Source: Pocillopora damicornis (taxonomy: Eukaryota). Taken from it: 64,000 bases of DNA. A model generated the notes under the pieces. That model was not told where the DNA came from and searched no databases. It was given only the letters and a program-made list of their open reading frames with translations. Both the position numbers and the translations under genes were made by a program. The stretch covers positions 248,001 through 312,000 of the forward strand of contig NW_020846078.1 of NCBI RefSeq assembly GCF_003704095.1. The letters run 5' to 3'. This document shows positions 557-50,064 of this stretch, in pieces. Each line of letters begins with the position of its first letter. Position 1 is the first letter of the stretch.

Positions 557-768
557 TTAACCCTTTGACCCTTAAGAGTGACCCGCATCTAATTTCTCCT
601 TACAATATCACCCCTGAATCACACATTAAGGTCATGAGAATAAAGAAGGTGATCACTAACCAAAGACTCTCTTGATTGTTAAACTCATTCTCCGTGTCAG
701 CGCCTTTGGAATTGTACAGAGAACAGTATGGAGAAAGTGCATACTGATGTAAGGGTGTAAAGGGTAAA
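557..768. mobile_element. piggyBac-like MITE (~210 bp)
   Basis: Starts TTAA-CCCTTTGACC and ends GTAAAGGG-TAAA. The internal sequence is shared with other copies in the window. Confidence 0.7.
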
Positions 769-1003
769 AACATTAGGGTATGCTCATGTGAATGTTATTC
801 TTTAGCATGCTATCAGTACCTCAAACTATTATTTCACTTACATTTCTACTAAATGGTATTTCAATTTTTAAGTCTTCAAAATATAAAAACTATTAAACAC
901 ATTATTTGAACATTAATATTTATGTATAATTACTTCATGAAAATTATTAGGTATTATTAAATATGTGACTATTAATCCTTTGCACTTTTATCGTCTTTTT
1001 CAG

Positions 1004-2021
1004 AAGTGGAGGCCATTTTGTAACATGTATGAAGGAAAGATTGATGATTTCAATTTTGCAACATTGTTGAGGTAAAATATTTTTCAGCTACAGTTTTTTC
1101 AGTAGAAATGTGGGCACAAATTTCATTATATTTCTATTTTTCTCCTTAGAATTGACTGTGCTAAAGGTTATGAAGAAGAAAACACTATCTTAGGTAAGAC
1201 AACACTCAACCAGTAGGAGGATAGTGAAGGAAATGGAAATATTTGCTACAAACCTGCTAAATCCTTTAAGTCCCAAGATCAAATAAGTTATTCTCCCAAC
1301 TGCCTGCCTTACATTTCCTGGTAGATTAGACAGGAGAATTCAATTCATCTAGTAGATAACACCCTGTAGCTGATAAGCTTGTCTGTTCTCATAACTTTGT
1401 TGCAAGATAACATATTGGAATTGCAATGAGTAGCTGCAAGTTAATCACTGGTGGGAGGTACATTCATTTTGTGGTATTTTTAAGTTGTCTTTTCCTAGAT
1501 TTTCAACTTCATAGCTTTTTGTATGGCAGAAAATGTAAAAAAGTTAAAAGAACCTTTAAGATATTTACACTTAGTTCAGCACTTTCTGAAGGTACTTTTT
1601 TATCATGGTGGTCATGAATCAAAAGTGATGAAGTTTTCATTTAACTCGCTTGAATGTGATGTTCAATTACTACAAGCACTCACAATTTCATTGCACATAC
1701 TGTGGAATAAAGAAAAATTATCAAAATATTACAAAATTCTGTTCAAAAAAATGGATGGAAAATTGAAGGTTAGGGTCAGGATATCATTCGTAGGTTTTTA
1801 ATTTATAATTTTTTTAAATTTGCATTATCTGTTTTCTCAGCACTGTAATGTTTTCCACATTTTGAAGCCCAACGGTTATTTTATTCACTTTCCCGCTCAT
1901 AGTTACAAGGATCCAGTTCTACGCAATTGAGATTGCACGAAATAGACGGGGTCTGAACAAGCCTCTATTGGAGAAGTCTTCTGATGCTCAACCCAGTGCA
2001 CAGGAAAGCCAAGGAAGATAA
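1004..2021 (+). CDS. PBDC1: PBDC1 (polysaccharide biosynthesis domain-containing 1), last three coding exons; 5' part lies upstream of the window
   Basis: Exons 1004-1071, 1150-1193 and 1903-2021 have AG/GT boundaries and join in frame. They translate to KWRPFCNMYEGKIDDFNFATLLRIDCAKGYEEENTILVTRIQFYAIEIARNRRGLNK...*, matching the family motifs KWRPFC, TLLR and RIQFxAIEIARNR. Confidence 0.93.
1258..1458. mobile_element. Degenerate piggyBac-like MITE in a PBDC1 intron
   Basis: taaatcctttaagtcccaagatcaaataagttattctcc...tcactggtgggagg resembles the 54209-54419 copy. Confidence 0.5.
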
Positions 2022-2339
2022 CATCACCTTGTAAAACATAGTGTATTGGTTCAGAGCATGTTACTCTTGGTGTAATGTATATGATATAGTAGGCTGGGGG
2101 TCACATCATTCAGTTTTTATTTGCCAAATTGGTTGCCATGAAACATTACAGCTGTGGTTACTCTAAGGTAGCGCAGTTGTTGTTGTACATTGATAATCAT
2201 TTAATGGATATGAGTATGAGCGCTGGAATCAAAATTTTAACTAACAGACCCTCCTAAAAAATATTCCTGAAAATTAAAACTAGGTAACATTGAACTTCAA
2301 GTTAGCTAAATAAGAATCCTAAGTATGTGATAAATTTTC

Positions 2340-2680
2340 CTTCCATTTTATTGGCTAGGAGCCCGCCAGTAAGAACTTGTTAATAACTGCTCACAGATAC
2401 TGGCCTGCTCATGCGTAAAGCTGTATGTTCTGCTCATGCGTAGTTGTGTCCACGTTCCTCTGGTCGCTTCCTGAGATTTCAGAGGGTGATTTGCTCAAAA
2501 TTATTAAGAAAAGACAAACTTGGGGATAGAGTGATTAAAAAATTATTGAATTTAGGTATTGCAAATGTTGCGATTGGTGTGTGTCTTGCGATTAATTTTG
2601 TCATCCTTCGATTTGGCGAAATATTCGTCTGCTCGCTGCTTACATATCCTACTTCTCAACGTCATCGAAGAAATTTTCAT
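2340..2680. repeat. Degenerate interspersed repeat
   Basis: The motifs attggctaggagcccgcca...ctgctcatgcgtaa...aaacttggggatagagtgattaaaaaattattgaa resemble a recalled coral repeat family. No coding signal. Confidence 0.4.
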
Positions 2681-2711
2681 TGTTTGGGCATCCATCCAAA
2701 ATTTGAATCTG

Positions 2712-3200
2712 CTTCTTGGTACCTAGAAATCCAAGAGCATTGGCCATAGATCAAAGGTGTGTCTCTTCAAAATCAATATGCTAAGCACCCTCTTAGTGGA
2801 TCAGAAGCCTAGAAGATGACGAAGACCATCAGCCACAAGCTGGACGTCTTCCAGAACAGATCCCTGCGGAGAACTCTCCGCATATTTTTGGCCTAACACC
2901 ATCTCCAACAATGAACTGCACAGAAGAACGGGCAGAGAACTCATCACCCAGCCGAGAGGAAGATGGAGACTAATCGGCTACGCGCACCGAATACTTTTGT
3001 TATTCCTACCTAACGTCGCCCTCCGATGGACGGCCGACGAAAGAGAGACTTTCCCAAGGAAACTTGGAGAAGACGCATAGAAAGGGAAATGAGTGACAGA
3101 GGCTGGACACGGAGGCAGCTTGACTAAGTGACAACCGACAGAAATCAATGGCTTTTTCTGACCGAGGCCTTAGGTGCATAGACCTACGAAGAGGACTTAC
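2712..3200 (+). mobile_element. 3' remnant of an RTE-like non-LTR retrotransposon (C-terminal to RT), with stops and frameshifts
   Basis: Broken translation LFKINMLSTLL-GSEA*KMTKTISHKLDVFQNRSLRRTLRIF/WPNTISNNELHRRTG...RGRWRLIGYA...PKETWRR matches the typical RTE-clade pattern LLYGSETW...LRRILRIFWPxxISN...RWRWIGH...GRPKETWRR. Confidence 0.85.
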
Positions 3201-6200
3201 CAATGTGGTTTTTCAGACGTAGAAAAAATTAATGCTAATGAATTAAAACACACACATATATTTGAATTATCAGCTATGTATACTTTGCCACCAGTCATAC
3301 AATTGTCCCTTGGCGGGAACATTTGCATACCTTGATAACTTCATGGAAATCTTCCAGTGAGTTTATTCGCCTAGAGCATATTAATTAATCTCATACAATA
3401 CAGGTGGCTGGATTTGAGCGCAGAAAATTGAATTTACCTGAAAACTGAAATTTTCAACAAGTAATCAACTGATCTCTTTTGCAGTTTGAAATAGCTGGTT
3501 TCAAATCTTCATCACGTGCCATTCGAATCATTTCTTCTTTGCTATTTCCCCTTCGCCCAAACTCTTAGTCGTTATATTTGAAAAGGATCAATCTTTCGGT
3601 TGATTATCCAGTGAATGTAAGATTTTAGATGTATCATGAGTCTAATGTTCCATAGCAGATTCTATTATGATTTTTCTTGAGGAGTGCTCCCATTACGCGA
3701 CGGTATGTTGTCGTTAGCTAGAGTATTTCATGAGGTAAAGGAATGTCACGTGAGACACAGCGTTACGTTCTTTGTCCTATCGTCATTTGCGGCACATTGG
3801 CCGAGGAATGGTGCGTTCAAGAGGTTTAGGATGACAAGGGGGGTCGGGAGGATGGGGTGGTGAAATTGAATTTTAAATAAAAGTCACGGAAACGCGAGGA
3901 GGTTTTTTTCTCTCGGAGGATTACTTTATTTCCTCTGGAAAATCTCTCGGCTTATAAAACACAAAATGAATTACACAAGGATTAAATAGGCGGTTTGCTT
4001 TTCGACGAAACATGCTGAATTTGATAGATTTTCTCGAAAAAGCTTGTAGAGGGTGTTTCCCTTTGTTTTCGTTCCAAACTCCCGTGATCTTTGGCCCAGT
4101 TACAATACCACCCAAAATAAAAATAAAAAAATGAAAAAAAACTTCAGCATATATATGCTTACACTCTTGGTTTACTTCCAACGCGGAGATGGTGACCGCA
4201 CGCAGTTCTTTTACTGCTTCACGGTAACTGCAGACAGCCAGAAGGTAAGGAATACATTACTATTAATAGCTGTCAGGTCACTAAAAGTATTGTTTGATCC
4301 ACACTCAATCGCTAAGATTAAAACCACGATATCTGAAGAGCCAATATTGATGCATCTTGTTTTGGTTAAGCAATAGCCATGTAGTGTATGTTCATACACT
4401 TACTTTCGTGCAGGAGGAAGCTTTTTCCTTCTCTTATTCCATTTCGGTGACATTTCACTGAGTTGATTGAACACTAGACTTTCGATTTCATTGAGACGTG
4501 TCGTCTTGAGTAAACAGGAATCTAAGTGAAGTTTCGATCACGTTTGTATTAATATAAAGCGCGCTTTCGACCATACCAAGGCCTTAGTCACCTCGTTATT
4601 CTTCGATATGCATTCCACGAGGGTCAACCTGGAAACTTTTTCCTCTTTTGTTTGTTGTATTTCACCATGTAGTTTACTTTTTTGTTTCTTTTTAGAATCT
4701 AAATTGAAGGTTTCCTATAGTTTTTTAACGATATTGGACGATTGCATAAGTATTAGAAAGCGTGACTTGGCAATCTTTCTACTTTAAGAAACTAACGTTT
4801 AAAACCAACACCCCATTGAGTTATTTAGTTTGCAGGGTGAAGATTACTAAGATTTCTACAAAGCGTTTCGTGAAAAATTGGATGGCCTGCGTTTTTGTTC
4901 AAGATATTAGTATACATATTTAGATAACCGAGTTTTACAAGTATTGTTTTCAGTGGACTTGTTTCGACTCTTGAAGATTTGGTTTTCGATTTTCGATTCC
5001 TGATGACGTAAAATCTAATAGTGGTAATGGGAAAATTAATTGTCAAGTCGTGACCTAATCACGCTGTCTTTTCCATAAGGCGTTTTTCACAGCGTTGCCT
5101 GTGCTGGCATGGAAATTACCAGGTTAATCAGATGGAAGAAAACTTTTGAACAGAATAGTAGATTTATGTTTGGGAAACCGAAAATCGTCAATGAGGAAGT
5201 GAAACTCATCAGAGGTACTTTCCCGAGGAAGGGAATTTATAACCAACATATACGACAGTCACACAATCGAATGCATTAGATCAGCAATATCGAAACTGAA
5301 AAATCACCGAAGTTCGAAACACCCTTGATGATGTAAGCGCCGGGCTGAGTTCCAAATGCTATGATGTCGAGTTTCAGGAGTATTACATCTTAGAATTGTC
5401 GACCAAACGCGGAGTCGGAAAATTTACCATCACTCGAATTTATACGCAGGTAAGCTTCGATGTAAATTATTTCGGCGCTGTCTTCTGATCTTAAAAACGA
5501 CGCGGTTTGGTTGAAGGGGGTTTTCTATGATTAACTTCCTTTTCTGGGGCCGAAGTTTCGATTTCCACCGAGGGGATGAATGTTCTGAATGATTCTGATA
5601 CAAACCTGCAACTAAACTGAAACAGTGTGTCCAAGAAAATGCCGCTAAACAAACGAATAACTGTATAACGTGGCAGAAATACTATAAATATTCCACTGGT
5701 ATTTTTTTTGTGTTACATGCGATATTGAATCTTGGCGGAAGTGATGTACTCAGTGTCAGCTAAACGCAAAGAGAGACAACAACAGTTTTTTTTTCTGTCC
5801 CTTTTACAAATGGTTTTGTTTTTTGTTTTTCGTTTAAATTGTATTTCTAGTTTAATGCAATTTTTTCTGACGTAGTTTCAATGAAGTCAGAAAGTTATCG
5901 TAATTTAAATACCGTTTGTTGTCAAACCTAACATGCAAATATGTCTTGCAGAATTTACATGCCACGCGTCACAGACCTTTGCAAAATATTTACTTTCTCC
6001 ATCAGGACGATTTATATTTATAATTTCGGGTAAATTTGTGTCACCTTTAACTCAAGAAAGTTGTTTAACATCGTTAGTATGTAAAACTGAAATCAAAGCC
6101 GCCCTAACCTGGTGAGCAACTTTTCACAAGTTTACTTTGGAGATACAACGTAGAAAAATATAGCGAGTGCTTCATAGACAAGTTTCCTCGTCAGGGAGAA

Positions 6201-7633: not shown

Positions 7634-7735
7634 AATCATTTTCTTTGCATGAACCACAAAAATTACTATCTGGCTATTTACATGTTTTTTTGTTTACACG
7701 TATCATGTGTTTTTTTCTTATTAGCGTGGAAAAGT

Positions 7736-10700
7736 ATGTCGAACTCATCCAATCAGCCCGCGTATCAACGTTTTGATACAGCAGAGATTCTGGCAGAATT
7801 CCTGGGTAAGATACTACAGAGATGTTAGTCAGTCTTTTGATCCCAGAATAACGATTTTATTTTACACAATAAAACCGTTATTGCAGTTCAGAGGCTGAGA
7901 AAAGGACAATATAAAGGGGAACATGGGTGCTTTTATCTCTTTTAGCTAATCGTATTTCCGTACTTATTTCCAAGCCAACTCCATCCCTCTGACATTTTTT
8001 TTCCTTGCCAATTGTGCGATATACCTCATGTAGAGGATTATTTAGCCCTCTACAGAGATTCTGATGGTCGTCAAGCTGCATAATCGAGTTTATTCGCTAT
8101 GCCATGTGAGGCTGTAGCTTGAAATCTTCATTTCAAAACTGGGACTATTCCTTCGAGAAGATGAAAAACGACGGCTGAAGTAAATATGTTAATTACATCA
8201 TAATTTGTGTTTCAAGCCTTTAACCAACAAAACTGGACAGTGTTTCATTTAGCTGTTTCGTTTTGCTCTCTTGCATTCAGCATTGAACCAGGCACTTTTT
8301 CCTATGGAGTTCAGGTATAGGGCCCGAGTCTAGTTTCACGAAAGCGAGGCTAGTTAGGCCGTTGACCAATGAAAGCTCAAGGCTTTACTACACGTGACGT
8401 GATTGGCTGCTGCGACTGACGTGATAGCACTGTTTCTTCGAACTATGACAATACTAAAATATGATTAATTCAATGATGTCTTCCATAGTTTTTGTAGCGG
8501 TTCGAAAGTCGACAGTAAACATCTTAAAGCTTTCTATTCGTGACTTGTATTATTATTCGGTTTGACATTTACACCCAAATATCCGTCACTGGATTTCAAA
8601 CTCTGGATCATTAGTTTAGCTTTGGATTTAAAGGGTGTAGAACGGAAAACAATGAAAAACCTCTGCATGGCTTTAGGTCAGTGGAGGAAATTGGCTGAAA
8701 GGTGCCATTTTTTGCTCACCCTGCTTTCTTGTCCTTTCCGTTAATAGCCGGAGAGTCTGGTACAAAACGAAGGCTGGTTAAAGAAGAAGGCTGAAAATTA
8801 GTGTAAAGTCAATATTAATGCTCGATTCGAAGTGAGCTACCGATAAAGTCAACTATGAGACATAGATATGTAACCATATTTTTTGGAACAGATAGGAATA
8901 ATATATTATTTGTACGGATGTAAAAGTATGAGGGGAATTTATTCTTAACTATTGTTGATTATTTTTACCAACTGTCCATGATATCTTTTTTTTATTCTCA
9001 TTTTAGACTCTCCTTCGGATCATCATAACTTGGTTACTACGGACTCTAGCCCTGTTGTATCGCCCAACTTTCTATCACAGCTAGTAATGCATAATGAACC
9101 ACAATACCTCAACCCCCTTCAGCCTGGTTGCCCCTCACCGCCAGACAGCGAAAGAACAAACACACCTTCTCCCTTTGCAACTCACACCGTTCAAACACAC
9201 AATACCCTCCCAGATGGGAACTTCGTTTGCGAACCCCTTATTCCGAGTGCTGGACCGTCCGGTGCGGATTTACGAGCGCCTTGTCAGTACCAGACTTTCA
9301 GCCTTCCGCGTGATCGTGTAGGAGGAACCAATTTTGTCCGATACTCAGATAGAAGAGTTCAGGTGACCCATGCCCATTGCAATGAAGCGAATATCAAGAT
9401 CCTTAATCCGCGGGCAGAATACGACAAAGTGCAGAGAAAGCACGGACATAGAGGGAAATTTTCAGAGCAAAGAGTAGCAAAAGGAAAGGTAGGGCTGAAG
9501 CCTTTTCTCGCGACAGTGCAAACCTGAGATTTGTTTTTTGATCGATCAAAAACTACAATCTGATTGGGTATGCTACTCGCTATCTATTACGTGGTAGATA
9601 GTGGGTAAATTAAGTGAGTAGAATAACGGTGTGCGGTTATAGACAAAATTAAAATAAAACCACGGCCCTGTCTCCTTGTTAAGTTTTAAACAAACAGCAG
9701 ACTTGAATACTATAACAAGTACTTTTTTCTGGTGATTTCTATTTTTTTTTCAGGCTTCGTCCTCGTTAGCTATTTAGCAATAGAAATCTCGAGTTGATGA
9801 GTTAATTGTTTTGAAAATATGCAGTGGTAAAAATTGTTGCCAAGCACTGTTTCAATTTTTTTGATAACAAGCTTGACAATTCTGGCTCAATGTGGCTCTC
9901 AATAAGTTCTTTTTAGGGTTCATTTTTGGCTGATTTCAGGTTGAGATGGAAATAGACACACAGCTGCCTCTTCGTCAACTAGAAGTTTATGTGTTGCGTG
10001 ATTTTGAAGCTGAAAAGAAGCTCTACAGTAAAGACCCAAAAGCATACGGAGTAGGAGAGATACGATTTCCTGAGAAGGATGTCCAAGAAATGAATACTCT
10101 TGGTACGTACAGATCAGTAACTACCGCGCCAAATGCTTTGCAAATACAGGGGCGAAATTTATTGAGATCCTTGATTGCTTATTTCGGTCAAAAATCGACT
10201 GAGTTAGAGTACTCAATTCTCCATCGATGAATTATCCCAAAAGTTACTCTTTCCCTGATCTCTCGGGTGAAACTCGCACATTGCCTCTTGGATGAAGAAT
10301 GAACAAAAATCTCATGGGTAATCTGCAGTAGTAAATTTGTAGCATAGCATTGGATATTTTCAAGGAGATCCCTCAGGTATTTGGAAATATTGTTAATCAA
10401 AGTTATCTAAAATGACTGAATATGGTTTATCTTAAGAATGAGGAGTCTACGGGGGATTCAGGCGTAGTGCTGTACCTTGTTTTCTCGCATTCTGTATGGA
10501 TCCACTTTTGGTTCTACTTTTGCTTCCGATTGGTTGAGTGGGTTAAGCAAGGGTCCTTAACTGATCAATGATAGTTGAAAAGCAAAACCAATGCGATCTC
10601 GCATTATATGAAAATTACTGTACTGGTGGTGGTGAAAAGGCTTCAATATGTAAATCTTAAAACATTTTCTCTCAGGTCAAAACTCCAAGTACGTTTGCAA

Positions 10701-13700
10701 AATCGACCTTGACTCCGTGTACAAAACAGAGGATGGTAGGGAGATTTACCGACTGGAAAAGACGAGAGGCTTAGAATTCAACCGATTCTTTCTAAAAGTC
10801 TTCCTCGAGTTAAACAATGGACAGAAGTTGGTCCTTTTCCCTTATGAGTTTGTACTAAAGAGCAGCAAGACCGTGAAAGGTAAGCACATGGATCCCCTAA
10901 GATTTCTTACAGCACCATACGCAGCATTAGTGTAAGCATCAAATAATATCTATTTACCTCTTGGAAATGTAGGAGGTAAATGTTAATAGTGATGATAATC
11001 GTAAGATCGTGATGTTTCCTCAGTCAGTGATGCAGTCATACTTAGAATAATGAAATTCGCGATACTTCCAACTGAAGTCAAATTTGAGACCACCTGATTC
11101 CAAGTAATTCTTTTACTTTAGAGCGCTTTTCGATTAAGTGCCGTAAAATTAAGAGCAAAGAAATCACAGCAGCAAATCAGAGCAAATTAAGGAAGAAGTT
11201 ACCAGAGCCTTCGAGAACTAAACATGAAGAAAAAACAGCGCGGAAAACGCGAGTTGTTGAGACGCCGTTGGTTCTAGTTTTGCATTTGATTGGTTGAGAA
11301 AATGGCGCAAATTTTCTGGACCAATCACAAAGAGAAGTACAACAAAACGTATGCAATCCTGACTTTTTTTTGACACTCAATTGATTTAGCATTGGGTTGC
11401 GGGAAACTCCCGACAGCTTGGCGTGTAAACTTGGTTTTCGCCACAAACATTTCGCACGTATACCAACCATTCTGTCATGACTTGAATGTAGACGTGATGC
11501 TTTTATATCAGTGATGCAATTGAAGATGATGCCTTTTGTTAAGCTTACTGTTCAGATGAAAGTTTTGATAGTGTGGGTTCACTCAATCGAACTTCCAAGG
11601 TTCTTGAAGTGAAAATTACCTTTGGTAGTAACTGATGTTGAAAAAAAACATCATTTTGCAATAGTTATTTCTTTCTTTGTGTGATAAAAGTTAAATTTGA
11701 TGGTAAAAGTGGGGTATTCGAATATTAAAGTGATGCGAGGGAGTTTTAGAATTCCTGAAGAGTATCCCTTAAAAGTATCAGTGTTTATGTATGCATCCTA
11801 GGAAAAGATGTATATTACCAACGGGTGTTACCCAATGCGTTGAAAATTTTGGATTGCGGTAACAACTGTTTCGTTGCTCACTCTTGTGTTACTGTAGACA
11901 CCACAAATGATACCAAAACCCTCATTTAAGCCCTTTGAAGATACGCTGATCACCTCTCCCGCGTTTAAAGTAGTTTTAATTCAATTCTATTTCAAAAGTT
12001 CCGAGGGAACCTCAAAATGTCCTCTCACCTCAAACAGCTTGCTCTTTAACCTCTCCTCGTCAAGGTCCTCCAGGTAAGAATGACCTAATTGTTAACGATT
12101 TTACGTCTCTAGTTACCTATAAGCTTAAAACATTTGATCATTATATCGGGGATATCTCGACGTATGGATAGTGAGGAGACGAGTACGAAAATCTTGAGCG
12201 AGAGCCATTTTCCGATATGATCTTTTCGTTAGAGGTGATGGCTCGAGAAAGATCGTGGAGTTATGTTTGAACTTAGGAATACTATTTCGTTTTAGAAATT
12301 TTTCCTGTAGTCACTAGAGTACTGAGGAGCATTTCATCGCCTGATGTGAGTCCTAACGTTTAACTTGGTCATTCATCACAGCTTTTTGGCCAGGAGTGTG
12401 ATAACCTGAGCTTTAGAGCTGGGGCATACTGAAGTTTCTTATTGATCTTACTCTTAGCCTCCAGATGAACTAGTGTCTTGAGACGTATTCGGAGAAAGCG
12501 AGACACCAAAAGGCGATCGGAGTCAGTTTTGCATTTGATTGGTCTAATATGAAACATGCGGTTTCAAAAGAGTTACTTTCGACGCTCCTTTGAGACGAGT
12601 AGTTTTTCCAAAGCTTAAGCTGAAGAACTGACCTTTTCCACCGTTCATTGAATCAAAATTACTTTGTGATTTATTTTCACGATTCCTACAGATAGCCGGT
12701 ATGAAAGCTTTATATGCCAACAAATCGAAGCGGATATAGCTAAGATAAAAGACCTCGAAGTTGAACAGATAAAAACAGCGAACCACGACATCGCTTACTA
12801 CGTCAAACGGCAGAATGAAAGTCAATTTGAGGAAGGTGACGTGGTGGGATTCTTTGAAAGAAAAACAGGAGGCACTGTTATCGATTTCTTGACCAGTGAT
12901 AATGCTCATGAAGCCCGGCTGGCTGGTGTAATAAGTAGGTCAGCGTACCTAGTCGGGAACACAGGGCAATATGACGAAGAAGAAGATGGTAAGTAACGGT
13001 TGTTGCATGTCGTGCAAACATAATCGATAGTTCGAATTTATAAAAAGGATCGGGTAAGCATCAGTGATTGTTCTCTATATACTTAAAGTAACTACGAAAC
13101 CCAACATTTTAGCAACGAAAGTCGCTTTTATGGATGTACAAGACTATGAAGGCTTAAATTCCATGGCCTTTTCTAGTCGCCTGTTTTTGTTCTTGGGATC
13201 GTGCTATACGTATGTTTTAAAAGGGTTGTTTTACCTTGTCTTTTTATTTTTAATTTAAACCTAGATATTTGTGATATTTTTCTTTGGCCATGTGAACGTA
13301 AGGGTGGGGGGGAAGGGACGGTCTAAGATCCCCCTGGAACCCATTTGATTTCCCAAACCCCCCCTCCAGCCGATGAATAACAACCGGTCCCTAACTCTGT
13401 ATCTTTGTAACACTCAGATGCTGATCTTGTGTGCATCATCGGACAGATTAAAGTGAAAGTCATTGGCGAAGTGACACCTGGACAACTGGTTTACGCTTGC
13501 CCCAGTAATAAGTTCCCAGGGGTGGCAATTGCCACACCAGAACAAGGTAAAAACAAATTGATATAATTAACACAGAGATATAGTTGGGTTTGTCTGTACA
13601 GTTACAGGTTCTATCAGCTCAGTGCCACTTGAAAAACCAACAACATCGTATTTTATCTCTGTGTGAGGGTATAGACAATGGAGATTACCCCGCCACCTTT

Positions 13701-16700
13701 TGGAGAGCTATCTAGACAGTGAAGAGGAATTTGAATCCGAGAAAAAAATTTTGGAGAAGAATTTATATTAATTCCTTCACCACATTCATAGTTATGCCTG
13801 GTTCATACACCATCATAAATTACATTTTTGTATCACTTTTTCTTGATTCAAAGAAAACTGTGCAATTGGCTACCGCCTAGCTACAATTTTAATCGCACAA
13901 TTTATAATTCTGGAAGGTGCTCCGGCGAACTTTTTAACAAAAAGATTCCATATTGCTGCGAGTCTGTTGAGCAATAGATCAAAGATGGTGTCTAAATGTT
14001 GTAAGAACCAAAAGGTGGCACACAGGACACAGCTGGGTGTGTCACTGATGTTCTTTCCACATAATGACGTTTTCTGTGGTCTGTTACTGAACAAACCCAC
14101 GTTAATATCGAATCTCTTTGTTTTAAATACTAACGGAGCAAAAAGTAGTTTATGGTGACGTCATCTATGACGTTGTCCTCCAATAGATCATGGGTAAGAA
14201 CCAATCAAAATGCGTGAATGATTGACCTTATTATATAATTCGTATTACATAGGTCAAAGTCTTCACTGGTTTTTTTTTTATCTTCTTTGATACAATACCA
14301 ACCAAACTAAGGATGTAATTATGAAACGAACGTTAATTCGTTTAATTTGTCTCACGATGAAAGAGTCAGGCTAATCAATCGTGTATTGATCGTAATTGAT
14401 ACACGATTAAAGAGGTCAAGATTAACCAGCCTGACCTTACATCGTGAGACAAACTATTGAACGTTCATTGATCTTGAAATTACGATGAACGACAACCTTT
14501 TTTGATGTAACATCTCTTTGATTCCCTTTTTTTCATTTAGGAGACGATCGACGAACCTTGATCGGCTATGCTATGGGTGGATCGTCTGGTCCTGGGGTTT
14601 CCAAGGTGGACTGCATTGTGTCTTTAGTACTGAGCATCGGTGCGCAGGAGCAGTTACGAGCGTTGGATCAAATGAGACTAAGTATCGAGGAAGTGAGGGA
14701 AAACCTGTACACTAGTATAGATACGGTTGGTTTTAGAATTGCAAGAATGCAAAGAGGCTGGAGAGGTAAGAGGTGTAGAAGAGATAGAGTGAAATAAACG
14801 ATCCAGGGCTCCTTATGTCACCATTAAAATTATTTTTCAGAGACAACTACTTTGATAAGTTTAGGATGAATTCTAGAACGTCGCCAACGCCTGCACTTGT
14901 TTTCTTTAACGGTGTTCTTCGCTTTTTTTTTCTCTTTGATTGACGCCAATTGCAAATGACATACTTACGAAATTTGGGCTGAATTTTCAAGATGCACAAT
15001 TTCTCGTGTAGTTCATTCCTAAAACAGTCAACTAAGGGTGGTGTTATAAGATGACATGTAACAATGTCCTGTGACCTCTTTCTGGGGACACGCAAAAATG
15101 TTTGGGAATGCTGTTAAATTAGGTATCCAAGGGTATATTATAGTTAAACAGTGACGAAATTCCACTGAACACGACTTCAGCTGACGTGAAGTCTGAGATG
15201 TCTGGAACTTTTGATAACAGGACACCACTTGTTCAACATCGCAGTACAAACCTAATTATACTTAAAGATGATTGGATTCGATTTTTCCATGATAGCATCT
15301 CATGGTGAGGTCCCTTCTAGTCTCTGAAAAGACTCTCCTCTCTTGTTTTAAAACTACTGCCACTACAGATGACGTTTCTACCACATGGCAGGGAACTATC
15401 TTAGTATATAGATATTAACCCTTTAACTCTCAGAGGTGATTAACTTATAACTTCTCCCTATAATATCCATACATTATCCAGCGAACTGGTCGTGAGAATA
15501 CTCAGGCTTATCAGGTACGAGATATTATAATGATCCAACGCCGAATTCTTGTAACAAATTTACAACGAAATGTGTAGCAGCCAGAGGGGAGAATTGACAA
15601 TCCAATTTTGGGAGTTAAAGGGTTAACAAAATATCTGAATGAGTGCGAGAAAGAAGTAGTTGTACGCTTGGCACCATTCAGAGTTCGGACAATGACACCA
15701 ATGCATAATGTTGTATTTTTTCATTTTTTAGGGTTGTGGAAAAAACTGCTTGCAGTAACTGTATTCCTGGCAATCGCATCTGCCGTTTGTGCCCTGATGT
15801 TAGCTCCAAGTTCTCCATACGTCAAAGCCAAGTGCAGAGCTAATAGTATTAAAGGCCACTCGCTCACCTTTAAATTCTATCCTAAGGATTCGGACGTAAG
15901 AATTCTTTTTCTATTAGAGCGCTTTCCGATTTAGTGTCGCAGAATTAAAACGAAAGTGACCATAACAGCCAATCAGAGCGAAAGAAAATATTATAGGGAA
16001 CCAATCAGAATGAAAGTAAAAACAAGCTAAATGCCTAAAGCGCGGGGAAACGCGGTTTACTTCGCCGTGCGACTGGTCGTAAAAACTCGCATTTCCCTAT
16101 TAGCGCCTCTTATCAAATAAAATGATTACTCGTGTTTTCCCGCGTTGCAAGAAGTTTGCTCGTTTTTACTTTGAGATCTCAGTGGTTCCTTATGGCATTT
16201 TCCTTACACTGAATGTGTTTGGCCATTTTGGACCCTTTTTTGTGGCCTTTTCGAAGCTCAATCGAAATTCGCTCTGGAAAGAATTTATAATAATTGACTT
16301 AAATGAAAAATATTCCAAAATCACAAAGCTGGGTTGTCACGCGAGCTCGTTTGTCCTCGATTTTCGCAGGATCTTAAATCACGAAGCTAACAAACACAAT
16401 GATTTCAGTTGTTTCTCTAAATCTGACTTTTCTCTGTTTTGTTTCCAAGGACGAAGTTATTGTGAAAGGGTTGGAGTTTACATGGGAAAAGCTGAAAAAG
16501 AAATTAAGCCTGAGATTCGACAAAAAAAATGGAACAGGTAGGTATTTAAACATTTGATCTGCTCTTTTACTTTTCCCTCCGATTTACAGGATTGACCAGA
16601 ATGTTATTTCCTCTACCAATTTTAACACCCTGTTAAGCAAGCAGGTAAAGAGAATTATTAAACAGACCGTGCGGAAAGCTCCCTAATCCTGTGCTCAAGC

Positions 16701-17383
16701 CAACACTCGAATGTTGTGTTTATGTCTGGTTATTGAGCAAAAAGTTGGGTGAAACACGCTTAAACGTTGCAAAAAAATAAAAAATGGCTTAAGAGGAATA
16801 GATGAACGAAAAGGAAATTGGAGTTCCCTACTGAGCAATAATGGACCCTAACACTGTTTAGTTGTTGTTGTTTTNNNNNNNNNNNNNNNNNNNNNNNNNA
16901 TTGATGGCATTGCAACTGCTATTTCCATTATTATTTATAAATATTTTCAAAATGATCAACAAGAAACGAAAGATGAATTTTAACGAGGTTCTATTTAGTT
17001 CTGTTTGCTCCAAGCACTGACTTACGTTATCAAATTTGGTTGGAAATTCTGTTTCCAGTTCTGGTAAAAATTTTTCAAATGACCCCAAACACAACGTAAC
17101 CACATATAAGCTCTGTAATTTGTTGGATGTATTTCACGGGTTCTGGTAATAAACAGTAGGCTGTTGTAACTCTGCAGAGGAATACCGTTACTTTCTGAAC
17201 AAGATTCGCTGTGAAACCGGTGGAATTCGTTCTGTTGCATCATGGCTTGATCCGTCACCAGTGGAACCCAAGGTCAATGTGCTTGCCGTAGATCCTGCCT
17301 GTAAGGAGGTCTTCTACCACAGTCGGAAGGATGGGAAATGGCAACAGTACCAAGCTGTGGAAGACGTTCATTGTAATCATTAA
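7736..17383 (+). CDS. Uncharacterised ~700-aa single-pass membrane protein with a MYRF-like layout: putative DNA-binding beta-sandwich, Peptidase_G2-like chaperone domain, coiled coil, TM, luminal domain
   Basis: Eleven GT-AG exons join in one frame: 7736-7805, 9007-9488, 9940-10102, 10676-10879, 11999-12073, 12692-12988, 13418-13546, 14541-14765, 15732-15895, 16450-16537, 17178-17383 (2103 nt = 700 aa + TAA). Motifs: DIAYY...FEEGDVVGF...AGVISRSAYLVGN...VCIIGQIKVKVIGEVTPGQLVY...PGVA...IGYAM. TM segment LLAVTVFLAIASAVCALML. An acceptor at 7724 implies an upstream UTR exon (candidate donor at 5449/5450). The gene model is well supported; the function is inference. Confidence 0.85.
11120..11385. 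repeat. Interspersed repeat, CCAATC-rich family; partial relatives at ~10500-10620, 12490-12590, 15916-16273, 30850-31105, 38381-38508 and 41106-41233
   Basis: Recurrent motif tagagcgctttt...gaaaacgcgag...ttttgcatttgattggttgagaaaatggcgc...ggaccaatcac in several places. Confidence 0.7.
13932..14238. repeat. Interspersed repeat with internal inverted segments
   Basis: ttttaacaaaaagattc...gtctgttgagcaatagatca pairs imperfectly with tggtctgttactgaacaaac...gaatctctttgttttaaa; ends ccaatcaaaatgcgtgaat...ttattatataa. Confidence 0.5.
14328..14466. repeat. Nested inverted repeat (hairpin / fold-back MITE)
   Basis: Outer arm tttgtctcacgatgaaagagtcaggct pairs with agcctgaccttacatcgtgagacaaa; inner arm aatcgtgtatt pairs with gatacacgatt; gaacgtt/aacgttc at the ends. 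Confidence 0.75.
15415..15626. mobile_element. piggyBac-like MITE with intact TTAA flanks
   Basis: TTAA-CCCTTTAACTCTCA ... TGGGAGTTAAAGGG-TTAA: 14-bp TIR with one mismatch and TTAA on both sides. Confidence 0.85.
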
Positions 17384-20300
17384 CAAAAAACTCTCAGAAG
17401 TAGATATTGTATCTTTGGTTTTCATACAATGTTGATGATTGTTGCTGTTGTGGTAACTGGATTTTCCGTTATGATAAGTAGATAACAATAATGTCGAAAG
17501 AAGAATTTACTAATTTTACTTGTTCATTATCTCGGTAAAAGTTTCAATTTCTCGTGGATGTTTGTACATTTAAAGACACTGGCAATGACCGACTGAATCA
17601 AAGGTCGGAATGTTTCGTTAGCGATCGAGCGAAGTAGACCTAGGGTAACAGGAGCGCTACGTAATTTGAGCCACAAACACTTAAAAGCAATAGTTTCATT
17701 TGCTGTGTTGATTTGAAAACAGACCTGGCCTTCAAGAGTGTGAATGTTTTACTCTCGACATGGTTTTACAGGGAACCAGCAGTGCAGAAAAACGTATACT
17801 TTCAACCTTCAGAACAAATATAGGAGCCGAAACGTACTCCCTCGAGGGAGATGTGAAATTGTGAAGTAAAACCCAGATGACGCCAGATGTTAAATAAACG
17901 CAGAAGTTAGGTATCTCAAAAAGAAAAACGTCGTAATTTTGAGAGTCTTGCGCATATCCACTATATGAATTGCTTTAGTGATACCATAGGCGCCTCTTGA
18001 AATTATCATCAACATAGATAGCATGTAGATAGACTTAAATTTTAAAAGTAGGAGTATTTTTGTCAATATTTTATACCAGTGTAGTGATAGGAACAGTTTC
18101 TGGTAAAACAAGAAACCTGATGGATTTTTAGGAAGATCTATGAAGTATCAGACCGTGATCTAACTAGTTGGTGTTTACCAGTTGCTCTCAGGAAATGGTT
18201 TTTATTTTGGGGCTCTTTTCGCCGCAGGCTCTTGACAAACGTAGGAACATCTTAATTTCGCATAGTAACTAATTAAACGCCCAGTTATGTGCGTACTGAA
18301 GTGAAGTCAGTAGCTGAATTTTAGCTTTTCGTTGAGGAAAAGGAAGTCTCGATCTGCCAGAGTGGGTGCAACACTTCTGACCTAGCGAAACCGAACAAAA
18401 TGATAAAGTAGCAAATATTACAGAGCTCTGTGAGCTCGGGATTGAAGAATTCTATTATTACAGAGATCTAGCCTGATTTTATTCTACGATGGTCACGTAC
18501 ATTGGTTATTTATGTGATTGCAATAAACATTTGTCTACGTGTTAGTGCTTCATTGTAATGAAAAAAAAACCTTCTGTGTGCTTAATACGTGATCTACCAA
18601 CAACATCGATTTTGATGGAAGCGAAATAATTTGAAATCATTTCTAAATATTGAACGTTTTAACGGGGCAAAATTGACATTTAAAAATCACGTTAATGGGT
18701 TTACATCACCAATAAATAACCGCAGGTTATCTTAAATCCGCAACAGTAAATCACGCATTGGTTGTCGTTTAATCAATAACGTTCCCGCAACAATTATAAC
18801 GTTTCCCGTTAGTGGTCCCTCCCAAAGCTTAGAATTGAAAAATACAAAACAAAGAAAGCTTTTATTCTCTCTTTTTGGTCTCAAAAGCAAGACTAGTAAC
18901 CAGCTTTCTGTTGAGGTAAGTTAGTATGTTATCAGCCAAGCTTCAATAGACGAAGACCGCCTCTCCTTCAAGTCTGTCTTCCAACAACGATATGAGTGCA
19001 AATCTTCAGTTTGAGTTACGGTAAATTGACCGCTGGTTCTTTTTAAAAACATGTGTCCTCTGAGTATGTTTTTACATTTGTATTTGTGAGGAATGAAATG
19101 TTAAGTATGCTATGATGTTTTCCCGGTCGGTTTCTTTGGATGAGCAGGTTGTTGATGTTAGAATTAACGGTTATTGCATTTTTTTTCTCTTTGATTTCCC
19201 GTTAATATTTTATCTACTTGAGTAAATAGCTTGTAATTTTAAGAGTTCTTATACTTTCTTTTACGCTTATCATGATGTTTCATTAGATGCCTCTCGAAGG
19301 AAAATATGACTCGGCGAATGTCTCACAGTGTCTTCAAATTTAATTTAAATTACACTTAGTTTTTCAATTGCTGAAAAGTTTTTCAATTTTCCAAGATTGG
19401 GTTACTGTACAACCAGCCACCTTGACTTTATGAACGTAAATTAACGAAAACATTACTGCTAAAGCGTGTATTTCTCATTTGCTTGTAGTCGGTCTTCCAT
19501 GTGCAATTATTTTTAAGACATCTGCCTGATGTTGTTTTGAAGCTTCAAAGCCAATCGTTTTGTGAGGTATATCCATTTAGCTGATATCTCCTGCTATTTT
19601 GAAGTTCATTTCAGCTTGACTCACCACCGAAAGGCTCCGAAAAGACGCCTCAAGTCAAAACTGCAAAACTACTAACAAAACTTTTCTTCTTTGAGGTAAG
19701 AGCTTTTTGTATTTAACAATTTACTTACGAAATCATATCATCTTTTTTTTGTTGAAGGAATCAAAGGTTTAAGGAAATTTCGCCATTGCAGGCTAAGGAA
19801 AGACAGTTCTCTATTGAATATTGCTGCAGTATGTCTTAGGTTATTCGGCAATTATATAAAGATTTGGGTTGTTATAACTATGCGTGAAAAGTTTGCCTGT
19901 GTAGATTTTCAATATAGCAATCTTCTTCGTTTCGACGAAAAGTAAACGGTGATTTTTTTTTTAATGGCTATACCAATTAAATCATTTTTAACTTCAGGCA
20001 CAAAAAATAAAAAAAAATAAAAAAATAAGTTGTGTCTGATTTCACGTCTCCGAGACGAACCATTATTCAGTTTTGTAAACTTATTTGCAAATCACTTCTT
20101 AGTTGTAACTACCGTGGGAAGGTTTCTACTCTTTCAAGAGAAAGAAGAAGTAGAGATTTTTTTTAAATGGAAAATTTTTTCGTAAGACTCTGATTTTTAG
20201 CAATTGCTTTGTTGTAAATTTAAACTCAAGTTTATCCCGAAAAAGCTCAATTCGGGCGAAATTTTTTTCATCTGGAATTTGATCATTAAGGCTAGCGATG

Positions 20301-49032: not shown

Positions 49033-50064
49033 ATGTCTGAGGCAGGAAATATCACAGGTGCTCCCCCTACTGGCATAAATCCTACGCCGAATAGCATCGT
49101 TGCAGCTGTTTTCGTCGGTATATTGATCTTGGTGACTCTATTTGGAAATGTTCTCGTCTGTATCAGTTTCTACACTTTTCCCAACCTCAGGACGATCTGT
49201 AACTATTTTATTGTTAGTTTAAGTGTGGCAGATATTTTGGTTGCTCTGCTTGCTATGCCGTTTTGGCTCATTGTTCAGCTCAACAATACACTGTGGCCAT
49301 GGCCTCGGTTAAAAGAGGGGTTGTATTTCTTCTGGAGCTTCATCGATATTTTCTGTGGTACAGCCTCCATTATGAATCTTACAGCGGTCAGTATCGATCG
49401 AATGTTGGCAATCGTGACACCTTTTAAGTATCCAAAGATATTAACTACGAAGAGGGTCTTAATTATCCTCGCACTGGTTTGGTTGTACTCAACGACCATC
49501 GCATGTCTACGACTGGCCAATTGGCAAAGCTACGGCCTTTTTGCGGCCTTTGCAAGTTTCTTTCTTCCCTTGTCACTTGTAATCGTGATGTACACTGTCA
49601 TCTTTATTGTTGTCAAAATCCAAGTGCACAGAATCGGATCAGCTGGAGGGAAGGAACACGCTAACGAGATGAAGGCAGCAAAGACCATCTTAGTTGTCAT
49701 TGGCGCTTTCGTCGTTTGCTGGCTTCCATTTTTCGTTATTGTGGTAGGCCATGCAACAGACAAAAACTTTACTTACCCCATGGAAGTTTACAACATGTTC
49801 AAGTGGATGGAATACTTAAATTCGTGTTTGAACCCTGTGATATACACTTGTATGAACCGCACATACAGGCGAGCATTCAAGCGACTCTTTAATCGGGTTT
49901 ATCTTGAGCAAACTGTAGGGAACAGCCGACGGGGTTCCTCTGTCAGTATGTACCTCAGTAGACGAGGATCTGCGATCAGTGGCTACATGAGCCAACGTAA
50001 GCATCGTGGATCTATCGCCCATACTGCTGTACCCAACATGGAGGCGATCGAAAGTGAAAGTTAA
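49033..50064 (+). CDS. Class A (rhodopsin-like) GPCR, biogenic amine receptor-like, 343 aa, single coding exon
   Basis: Seven hydrophobic helices. Motifs GN (TM1), SLSVAD...MP (TM2), DIFCGTASIMNL with Asp3.32, DRM, W4.50, FFLP, KAAKT, CWLPFF, NSCLNPVIY. Confidence 0.96.
   Translation: MSEAGNITGAPPTGINPTPNSIVAAVFVGILILVTLFGNVLVCISFYTFPNLRTICNYFIVSLSVADILVALLAMPFWLIVQLNNTLWPWPRLKEGLYFFWSFIDIFCGTASIMNLTAVSIDRMLAIVTPFKYPKILTTKRVLIILALVWLYSTTIACLRLANWQSYGLFAAFASFFLPLSLVIVMYTVIFIVVKIQVHRIGSAGGKEHANEMKAAKTILVVIGAFVVCWLPFFVIVVGHATDKNFTYPMEVYNMFKWMEYLNSCLNPVIYTCMNRTYRRAFKRLFNRVYLEQTVGNSRRGSSVSMYLSRRGSAISGYMSQRKHRGSIAHTAVPNMEAIESES

What the first reader, a model, noticed from the sequence alone, without database searches (positions are those of the whole stretch)
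7736..17383. Candidate new membrane-tethered transcription factor: MYRF layout built with a different phage-type chaperone/autoprotease
Seen: 11 exons splice in frame to 700 aa. Regions: aa 1-24 acidic/hydrophobic; ~25-115 Ser/Pro-rich; ~120-306 globular, basic and beta-rich; 307-331 SP linker; ~340-500 tail-spike-like module; ~505-548 heptad-like helix; basic RGWRGLWKK then a TM at ~554-572 (type II orientation by the positive-inside rule, no signal peptide); ~125-aa C-terminal domain with 4 Cys. Known: MYRF and Dictyostelium MrfA have the order Pro-rich region, NDT80 DNA-binding domain, phage-related S74 intramolecular chaperone, coiled coil, TM, luminal domain, and self-cleave to release a trimeric TF. 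Inference: this protein uses the same logic but lacks the S74 signature (SDxRxK) and carries Peptidase_G2-like motifs instead. It would be an independently assembled or domain-swapped MYRF analogue. I do not know of a characterised animal protein with this combination.
Basis: partly seen in the sequence, partly recalled or inferred. Interest (0 to 1): 0.95.

Follow-up and report, generated by a model that had tools for sequence, protein, structure and literature searches.

The report
Coral membrane protein with phage chaperone domain
This is a real, expressed coral gene from an unstudied cnidarian-only family of single-pass membrane proteins. They hold a trimer-forming domain inherited from phage tail-spike "autochaperones" in a layout like the membrane-bound transcription factor MYRF, but DNA binding is unproven and the phage domain's catalytic glutamate is missing.

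Summary
Eleven coding exons (7736-17383, all GT/AG, 2103 nt) encode 700 aa. There is also one non-coding 5' exon. Spliced RNA contigs from four studies, a related species' cDNA and the Pocillopora verrucosa RefSeq model support the junctions. The N gap lies in intron 10, and spliced RNA bridges it.

The protein belongs to an unnamed family seen so far only in Cnidaria (corals, anemones, Hydra), with six loci in this genome. No Pfam family matches it. A canonical MYRF gene lies elsewhere (contig C2509), so this is not MYRF.

Predicted layout:
- an acidic disordered N-terminus;
- a basic orphan Ig-like sandwich (D1);
- a trimeric coiled coil and one TM helix in type II orientation;
- a luminal domain with four conserved Cys and a conserved glycosylation sequon.

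A homotrimer model scores 0.89 against 0.00 for controls.

D1 matches only generic Ig-like folds, so DNA binding is not shown. The G2 motif D-x-A-E-Y-F reads D-I-A-Y in all 100 family sequences, so G2-type self-cleavage is not expected.

This is a new variant of a known kind.

The parts
5298..5449 (+). Non-coding 5' exon. The donor is CAG|gtaagc at 5449|5450, and it is spliced to the acceptor at 7724|7725.
   Evidence: Nucleotides 25-178 of the related-species cDNA L010 align here at 83%, and the next block starts at 7723. The donor was read.
7736..7805 (+). Coding exon 1 (aa 1-23). It holds the start ATG and a conserved short acidic/hydrophobic helix motif.
   Evidence: P0118 aa 1-23 are 100% identical. 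The model has a helix at 16-22. The motif is conserved among orthologues.
9007..9488 (+). Exon 2 (aa 24-184). It encodes the Ser/Pro-rich disordered region, the basic arm, and the first strands of D1.
   Evidence: pLDDT is below 50 up to residue 140.
9940..10102 (+). Exon 3 (aa 185-238), the middle of D1.
   Evidence: The loose end before 10675 reads the tail of this exon.
10676..10879 (+). Exon 4 (aa 239-306), the end of D1.
   Evidence: The joint 10879|11999 is seen in RNA contigs.
9369..10863 (+). D1 (aa ~145-301, across introns 2 and 3). A basic orphan Ig-like beta-sandwich and candidate nucleic-acid-binding domain.
11999..12073 (+). Exon 5 (aa 307-331), the Ser/Pro linker.
   Evidence: The joints 10879|11999 and 12073|12692 are seen in RNA contigs. 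The model is disordered here.
12692..12988 (+). Exon 6 (aa 332-430), the neck and first half of D2.
   Evidence: A phmmer search with this exon found the family.
12700..12786 (+). Neck (aa ~335-363). It is disordered in the monomer model and forms an inter-chain interface in the trimer model.
   Evidence: interface residues 335-363.
12787..12801 (+). Motif D364-I-A-Y367-Y. It corresponds to gp12 D692-F-A-E695-Y, which lies directly after the gp12 cleavage site. The Glu position reads Tyr.
   Evidence: The structural alignment starts at model residue 364 and chain residue 692. The gp12 sequence was read.
12787..14623 (+). D2 (aa 364-501, across introns 6 and 7). It has the fold of the phi29 gp12 C-terminal autochaperone (Peptidase_G2) and of phage capsid cement proteins, and is the predicted trimerisation module.
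13418..13546 (+). Exon 7 (aa 431-473).
   Evidence: The joints 12988|13418 and 13546|14541 are seen in all 4 RNA runs.
14541..14765 (+). Exon 8 (aa 474-548), the end of D2 and the heptad helix.
   Evidence: 100% identical to P0118.
14630..14765 (+). Coiled coil (aa ~504-548).
   Evidence: The model has a helix at 508-572. The trimer model shows heptad-spaced inter-chain contacts from 504 to 547.
15732..15895 (+). Exon 9 (aa 549-603), with the basic juxtamembrane stretch, the TM helix and the start of D3.
   Evidence: The joints 14765|15732 and 15895|16450 are seen in RNA contigs.
15746..15802 (+). Transmembrane helix (aa 554-572), type II orientation.
   Evidence: Mean hydropathy is 2.8. Net charge is +6 before and +3 after. 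This is the only such segment in the protein, and every full-length member has one.
16450..16537 (+). Exon 10 (aa 604-632).
   Evidence: The joint 15895|16450 is seen in RNA contigs. The loose end behind 16537 reads the first letters of exon 11. Acropora and Pocillopora proteins are colinear here.
16875..16899 (.). Assembly gap (N), inside intron 10. It is not part of the coding sequence.
   Evidence: It is bridged by spliced RNA and by the cDNA L010.
17178..17383 (+). Exon 11 (aa 633-700 plus the TAA stop).
15812..17380 (+). D3 (aa ~576-700, across introns 9 and 10). A luminal or extracellular domain with four family-conserved Cys and a conserved N-x-S/T sequon. Its fold was not identified.
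   Evidence: pLDDT is 80-89. C583, C644 and C698 are invariant and C674 nearly so. A sequon at reference N630 occurs in 18 of 25 members, and sequon density is about 3 times higher on the C side. The Atlas search gave no hit.

Best explanation
The gene encodes a single-pass type II membrane protein of a family found so far only in cnidarians. The protein most likely assembles into a homotrimer through a neck, a domesticated phage autochaperone or cement-type domain (D2) and a coiled coil, all on the cytosolic side of the membrane.

The trimer presents three copies of an acidic disordered arm and a basic Ig-like domain (D1) to the cytosol or nucleoplasm. A disulfide-bonded, glycosylated domain (D3) sits in the lumen or outside the cell.

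I read it as a membrane-anchored trimeric regulator with the layout of MYRF, most plausibly a tethered nuclear factor. D2 would serve as the trimerisation (chaperone) module and not as a G2-type protease, because the residue at the G2 glutamate position is tyrosine throughout the family. If the N-terminal part is released, I infer another route: a host protease, proteasomal processing as for yeast Spt23/Mga2, or TM-less splice forms.

Shown here: gene structure, expression, family membership, the fold of D2, and the motif change. Predicted only: trimer formation and topology. Inferred: DNA binding, nuclear function and release.
For: - Gene structure and expression.
- Cnidarian family with no name and no Pfam match.
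- Homotrimer model: ipSAE 0.89, best of 3 controls 0.00, runs agree in at least 96% of contacts, partner pLDDT 86. The calibration mark was reached by 21 of 30 proteins solved as pairs of one chain and 0 of 23 solved as single chains. The job used three copies, unlike the calibration, and a similar complex has been solved, so the pass may be from memory.
- One strong TM helix, positive charge on the N side, no signal peptide, and conserved Cys and a sequon on the C side.
- Acidic N-terminus (pI 4.1-4.9) and basic D1 (pI about 9.1-9.8) in most members.
- K/R clusters after D1 in paralogues.
- Weak but concordant leads to Rel-like DNA-binding domains (COE 0.86, LAG1 0.81, SPT23/MGA2 0.80; Pfam LAG1-DNAbind E 2e-3 on one paralogue).
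- Glu is replaced by Tyr in 100 of 100 family sequences.
- A Nematostella isoform lacks most of the TM helix.
Against: - The Atlas and Pfam leads are below their thresholds.
- The window's own orthogroup has no clear nuclear localisation signal.
- No data here bear on localisation, processing or DNA binding.
- Sequence-level homology of D2 to G2 is statistically weak: hhalign E 0.007 and probability 5.5%, with no Pfam hit.
- The strict conservation of D364, I365 and Y367 could mean a catalytic site of a different kind. That would favour the self-cleaving rival.
Confidence: 0.42

Rival explanations
1. A true self-cleaving MYRF analogue. After trimerisation, D2 cuts the chain just before D364 (H363|D364) by a variant of the G2 reaction. 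A roughly 40-kDa N-terminal fragment is released and enters the nucleus as a transcription factor.
For: - The fold and register place D364 exactly at gp12's Asp692, the residue after the scissile bond.
- D364, I365, Y367, R414, S415 and C436 are invariant.
- In the trimer model, residues 365 and 367 touch 437-440 of a neighbouring chain near the threefold axis.
- The neck before D364 becomes ordered only in the trimer, as expected for a cut that follows trimerisation.
- The layout mirrors MYRF.
Against: - The glutamate that is invariant in 24 of 24 bacterial and phage G2 domains is Tyr in 100 of 100 family members.
- Phage cement proteins with the same fold do not cleave (structural matches; their behaviour is from my own knowledge).
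- Upstream of D364 there is only a short neck, so it is unclear whether a released fragment would stay trimeric.
- No experimental evidence is available.
Confidence: 0.2
2. Not a transcription factor. It is a stable trimeric membrane protein whose cytosolic Ig-like or arrestin-lobe-like domain binds proteins or lipids. Examples are an organelle or vesicle tether, a scaffold, or a receptor whose luminal or extracellular D3 senses a ligand. D2 is purely structural.
For: - The catalytic Glu is lost.
- The family is lineage-specific and has expanded to six loci in this genome, as many cnidarian effector or structural families have.
Against: - The acidic disordered N-terminus with a conserved short helix, the basic D1 and the K/R clusters fit a nuclear factor better.
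- All sub-threshold sequence leads point to DNA-binding domains.
Confidence: 0.3
3. It is simply the coral MYRF orthologue or another already characterised family.
For: Only the overall order of the regions.
Against: - No NDT80, Peptidase_S74, MYRF_ICA or MRF_C2 match on any exon or on full-length relatives.
- These four families hit in the correct order on another contig, G000:C2509 at 571.7-580.4 kb.
- All database names are 'uncharacterized protein'.
- No paper mentions the gene identifiers.
Confidence: 0.01
4. A gene-model artefact: the exons belong to separate transcripts, or the N gap hides a frame break.
For: None was found.
Against: - Single RNA contigs join E6-E7-E8 and E7-E8-E9.
- All joints from E3 to E11 are seen in RNA.
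- One 3.3-kb cDNA of a related species covers all exons.
- The gap lies in intron 10.
Confidence: 0.01

Closest known systems
MYRF / Dictyostelium MrfA (membrane-bound transcription factors with a phage Peptidase_S74 ICA domain; PMC3742443, PMC3742440)
   Same: - Type II single-pass membrane protein.
- Same order of regions: disordered N-terminal region, beta-sandwich domain, phage tail-spike-derived trimerising chaperone domain, TM helix, luminal domain.
- Predicted homotrimer.
   Different: - The beta-sandwich is not an NDT80 domain.
- The phage module is of the G2/gp12 type, not S74, and there is no Ser-Lys dyad motif.
- The G2 glutamate is missing.
- A coiled coil lies between the module and the TM helix.
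- The luminal domain is unrelated to MRF_C2.
- Cleavage, nuclear entry and DNA binding are untested.
- The coral has a separate genuine MYRF gene.
Bacillus phage phi29 gp12 pre-neck appendage, C-terminal autochaperone (Pfam Peptidase_G2 PF11962; PDB 3gqh, 3suc)
   Same: - Shared motifs in the same order: D-x-A at the start, G-V-I-S, and the L-x-G-Q-I-x-V strand.
- Predicted trimer, with a neck before the domain.
   Different: - The domain is internal and not at the C-terminus.
- It follows a disordered linker, not a beta-helix spike.
- It lacks the insertion of about 50 residues that gp12 has.
- D-[YF]-[AG]-E-Y-F-E reads D-[IVL]-[AG]-Y-[HYF].
- It is below the Pfam threshold.
- It is encoded by three exons of an animal gene.
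Phage capsid cement or decoration proteins (Pam3 gp6, T1, XM1, TW1; Pfam Phage_cement PF22758)
   Same: - They are trimeric and non-cleaving, which would match a purely structural role for D2.
- A weak Pfam hit occurs on a Nematostella paralogue (E 9e-4).
   Different: - Structural scores and identity are lower than for gp12.
- They are free-standing capsid proteins and are not part of a membrane protein.
Yeast Spt23/Mga2 and other membrane-tethered factors (ATF6, SREBP, CREB3)
   Same: An Ig-like putative DNA-binding domain held at a membrane by a C-terminal TM helix. Release would be by a protease acting in trans, which is the route I infer if D2 is inactive. The Atlas feature search lists the SPT23/MGA2 DNA-binding domain at 0.80.
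   Different: There is no significant sequence or structural match. Those factors have no phage-derived trimer module, and they are dimers or monomers.

Membership tests
Peptidase_G2 (PF11962, phi29 gp12 type) | Match to the Pfam model above its cut-off | tested here: not met
   No hit on any exon, in the whole genome read in six frames, or on 25 full-length relatives. gp12 itself scores E 2.6e-97.
Peptidase_G2 (PF11962, phi29 gp12 type) | Fold of the gp12 C-terminal autochaperone domain | tested here: met
   [not shown]
Peptidase_G2 (PF11962, phi29 gp12 type) | Cleavage motif x|D-[YF]-[AG]-E-Y-F-E with the glutamate. The catalytic role of Asp692 and Glu695 is from my memory of Xiang et al. 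2009 and MEROPS G2; the paper could not be fetched. | tested here: not met
   D and A/G are kept. Glu is invariant in 24 of 24 G2 domains but is Tyr in 100 of 100 family sequences.
Peptidase_G2 (PF11962, phi29 gp12 type) | Homotrimer formation | tested here: met
   This is a model only. ipSAE is 0.89 against 0.00 for the best of 3 controls, contact agreement is at least 96%, and pLDDT is 86. The pass may come from memory of the solved gp12 complex.
Peptidase_G2 (PF11962, phi29 gp12 type) | Autocleavage and release of the domain | not testable with these tools
   This needs protein expression and mutants.
MYRF family | NDT80/PhoG-type DNA-binding domain | tested here: not met
   No Pfam hit. 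The D1 model does not bring up NDT80 or MYRF DNA-binding domains among the top 50 of 48,161 chains.
MYRF family | Peptidase_S74 / MYRF_ICA domain and MRF_C2 domain | tested here: not met
   No hits on the protein. In this genome these models hit contig C2509, not the window.
MYRF family | Type II membrane topology with the N-terminus in the cytosol | tested here: met
   In silico only. There is a single TM helix, the charge bias is +6/+3, there is no signal peptide, and the conserved Cys and sequon lie on the C side.
p53-like / Rel-like / CSL-like DNA-binding beta-sandwiches | Specific structural or profile similarity of D1 to a DNA-binding Ig-like domain | tested here: inconclusive
   [not shown]
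Phage_cement (PF22758) | Match to the Pfam model above its cut-off | tested here: not met
   [not shown]

The most novel reading that the evidence does not exclude
Cnidarians carry a second, independent domestication of a phage tail-spike autochaperone, of the G2/gp12 type and not the S74 type used by MYRF. Here it serves as the trimerising, and possibly self-releasing, module of a lineage-specific family of membrane-tethered transcription factors with an orphan DNA-binding beta-sandwich. That would be convergent evolution of the MYRF mechanism from different parts.
Probability: 0.3. Interest if true: 0.85.

Novelty: new variant of a known kind. Interest (0 to 1): 0.7.

Why it matters
MYRF is the textbook case of a phage tail-spike chaperone domain built into an animal membrane-bound transcription factor. 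A second family with the same layout but a different phage chaperone (G2/gp12 type) would have two implications. It would show that this design arose at least twice. It would also give a natural experiment on what the phage module contributes: trimerisation alone, or trimerisation plus self-cleavage.

The universal Glu-to-Tyr change makes that question sharp and testable with simple mutants. The family is unnamed, has no Pfam model, and is present in the tractable models Nematostella and Hydra.

Tried and rejected
- Exon-by-exon Pfam search: no significant family.
- PHROGs on 25 members: nothing below E 0.02.
- Profile of the family against all PDB sequences: no match at E<=10.
- hhalign of the family against gp12 alone and against a 24-sequence G2 alignment: only weak statistics (E 0.007, probability 5.5%), although the register agrees with the structural match.
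- Word-indexed profile search with A1: saturated by close relatives and gave nothing new.
- Scans of viral contigs and of prokaryotic genomes with the family's motifs: no relatives.
- Scan of viral contigs with gp12: only phi29-like phages.
- Atlas search on D3: no usable hit.
- Literature: no paper mentions the gene identifiers or a G2-type domain in cnidarians. The gp12 structure paper could not be fetched, and one search found only an unrelated review. The catalytic role of Asp692 and Glu695 therefore rests on my memory.
- One Vibrio VCBS protein (P0009) among the phmmer hits matched in 21 short stretches. I treated it as a repeat artefact.
- Not done: I did not search or fold the joined exon model of the window. 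Exons were searched by reference, and the near-identical database protein P0118 stood in for the full-length protein.
Full report

The window is eukaryotic DNA with about 38% G+C. Canonical GT/AG sites link eleven open stretches on the + strand:
- E1 7736-7805
- E2 9007-9488
- E3 9940-10102
- E4 10676-10879
- E5 11999-12073
- E6 12692-12988
- E7 13418-13546
- E8 14541-14765
- E9 15732-15895
- E10 16450-16537
- E11 17178-17383

Exon-wise bookkeeping gives 2103 nt, which is 700 codons plus TAA. There is no internal stop, and seven of the ten introns are phase 1.

The assembly gap at 16875-16899 lies in intron 10. RNA contigs from four studies were laid on 10650-16649. They show every joint from E4|E5 to E9|E10. 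The sequence running on behind 16537 is the start of E11, so spliced RNA bridges the gap. The loose end before 10675 is the tail of E3. Single contigs join E6-E7-E8 and E7-E8-E9.

A 3.3-kb cDNA contig of a related species (L010) maps colinearly on all eleven exons. It also reveals a non-coding 5' exon at about 5298-5449 and a 3'UTR reaching about 18439. The Pocillopora verrucosa RefSeq protein P0118 (704 aa) hits all exons in order at 88-100% identity.

The genome has 234.35 Mb in 4393 contigs and is pocilloporid-like.

Exons were searched by reference, and P0118 served as the full-length stand-in.

**2. What family is it?**

A phmmer search of 1.8 billion representatives with exon 6 gave 86 hits. 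Every named one is cnidarian and called 'uncharacterized':
- Acropora, Montipora, Pocillopora, Stylophora, Porites, Oculina;
- Exaiptasia and Actinia;
- three Nematostella genes;
- two Hydra genes.

This genome holds six loci with the D2 exon: the window, two on C2374 and three on C1007. No member has a Pfam family above cut-off. PHROGs gave nothing. A family profile finds no PDB sequence at E<=10. No paper mentions the gene identifiers. Motif scans of viral contigs and prokaryotic genomes found no relatives.

A genuine MYRF gene lies on contig C2509. NDT80 (weak), Peptidase_S74, MYRF_ICA and MRF_C2 hit there in order on one strand. The window gene is therefore not MYRF.

**3. Anatomy**

The AlphaFold model of P0118, built with a 25-sequence alignment, shows:
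- disorder at 1-140, apart from a short conserved helix at 16-22;
- folded D1 at 145-301;
- disorder at 304-362;
- folded D2 at 365-500;
- one long helix at 508-572;
- folded D3 at 577-700.

Charge follows a pattern across the family. The N-terminus is acidic (pI 4.1-4.9), D1 is basic in most members (pI about 9.1-9.8), D2 is acidic and D3 is basic.

Every full-length member has one strong hydrophobic helix. Net charge is +3 to +7 before it and -1 to +3 after it, and there is no N-terminal signal-like segment. N-x-S/T sequons are about three times denser on the C side, with one conserved position in 18 of 25 members. Four Cys in D3 are invariant or nearly so. This supports a type II topology with D3 in the lumen or outside the cell.

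**4. D2 is a phage G2/gp12-type domain**

Against predicted viral structures, 98 matches reach E<=0.001. Nearly all are phage tail-fibre or preneck-appendage proteins, and one is from a Marseillevirus.

gp12 itself carries Pfam Peptidase_G2 at residues 643-854. Read side by side and in a relaxed hhalign run, the motifs correspond in order:
- D-F-A-E-Y-F in gp12 with D-I-A-Y-Y here;
- G-V-I-S-E-T with G-V-I-S-R-S;
- V-V-G-L-L-G-Q-I-A-V with L-V-C-I-I-G-Q-I-K-V;
- the last strands.

The coral domain lacks an insertion of about 50 residues that gp12 has. Sequence statistics alone are weak (E 0.007, probability 5.5%). The homology call therefore rests mainly on structure plus register.

**5. Trimer**

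A model of three copies of residues 335-552 scored ipSAE 0.89, against 0.00 for the best of three controls. The runs agree in at least 96% of contacts, and the partner's pLDDT is 86. The calibration mark was reached by 21 of 30 proteins solved as pairs of one chain and by 0 of 23 solved as single chains.

The caveats are that the job used three copies, unlike the calibration, and that a similar complex has been solved, so the pass may reflect memory.

The interface covers the neck at 335-363, which is disordered in the monomer model, patches of D2, and heptad-spaced positions from 504 to 547.

**6. The catalytic question**

In 24 diverse bacterial and phage G2 domains, the motif after the cleavage site is invariant at D, E, Y, F and E. 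In 100 of 100 cnidarian sequences, D is kept but the Glu position is Tyr.

From my memory of Xiang et al. 2009 and MEROPS G2, gp12 cuts between Ser691 and Asp692 and needs Asp692 and Glu695. I could not fetch the paper to verify this.

Self-cleavage by the G2 mechanism is therefore not expected. The strict conservation of D364, I365, Y367, R414, S415 and C436 leaves room for another chemistry, or for a purely structural role as in cement proteins.

**7. D1**

Sub-threshold leads all point to Rel-like DNA-binding domains:
- Atlas features: COE 0.86, LAG1 0.81, SPT23/MGA2 0.80;
- Pfam LAG1-DNAbind at E 2e-3 and 0.096 on two paralogues, at the same profile region.

DNA binding is thus plausible but not shown.

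**8. Reading**

The most likely reading is a membrane-anchored homotrimer with a MYRF-like layout. In it, the phage module trimerises the protein, and the acidic arm plus basic sandwich act as a tethered nuclear factor. Release, if it occurs, would be by another route. One Nematostella isoform lacks 16 residues of the TM helix, which hints at TM-less forms.

The rivals are a variant self-cleaving mechanism and a scaffold or receptor that is not a transcription factor. The 'plain MYRF' and 'gene-model artefact' readings are refuted.

**9. Verdict**

The family is undescribed. It is best classed as a new variant of a known kind: a membrane-tethered factor built around a phage chaperone module. 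Interest is 0.7.

Noticed in passing
window 15250-15650 (intron 8): RNA contig depth is 700-5900 here in all four runs, against tens to hundreds on the exons, and many contigs have loose ends. It looks like an abundant repeat or transposon-derived transcript inside the intron.
   Followed up: no
window 5298-5449 and 17384-18439: There is a non-coding 5' exon with a canonical donor at 5449|5450, and a 3'UTR of about 1 kb. The transcription unit therefore spans roughly 5.3-18.4 kb, which is wider than the finding's coordinates.
   Followed up: partly
Nematostella proteins P0016 (isoform X2) and P0098 (isoform X1): Isoform X2 lacks 16 residues that form most of the TM helix in X1. A TM-less splice form of a paralogue may therefore exist.
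   Followed up: partly
G000:C2509:571685-580414 (+): This is the canonical MYRF gene of this coral. NDT80 (E 0.44), Peptidase_S74 (2e-6), MYRF_ICA (8e-9) and MRF_C2 (6e-8) exons lie in order on one strand.
   Followed up: partly
G000:C4052:152903-153079 (L001); G000:C464:470408-477698 (L003-L005): Four further Peptidase_S74 matches sit in long open frames (601, 458, 563 and 151 aa), three of them clustered on C464. They could be intron-poor tail-fibre-like genes or viral insertions.
   Followed up: no
G000:C2374:152539-162622 and G000:C1007:109330-130716: Five paralogous D2 exons lie in two clusters. The P. damicornis model pdam_00018281 (P0121, 1165 aa) contains two copies of the module and may be a fusion of tandem genes.
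   Followed up: no
window 49033-50064 (+) and 29921-30487 (+): One is an intronless-looking rhodopsin-type GPCR ORF (7tm_1, E 1.6e-49). The other is an exon of a Cys-loop ligand-gated ion channel (Neur_chan_memb, E 1.7e-22), next to an N run at 29631-29860. Both are ordinary neighbours.
   Followed up: partly
BFVD entry A0A481YT87 (Marseillevirus LCMAC101): A 161-aa giant-virus protein shares the D2 fold (Foldseek E 9.5e-6, TM-score 0.59 on the target). It is a possible intermediate between phages and eukaryotes.
   Followed up: no
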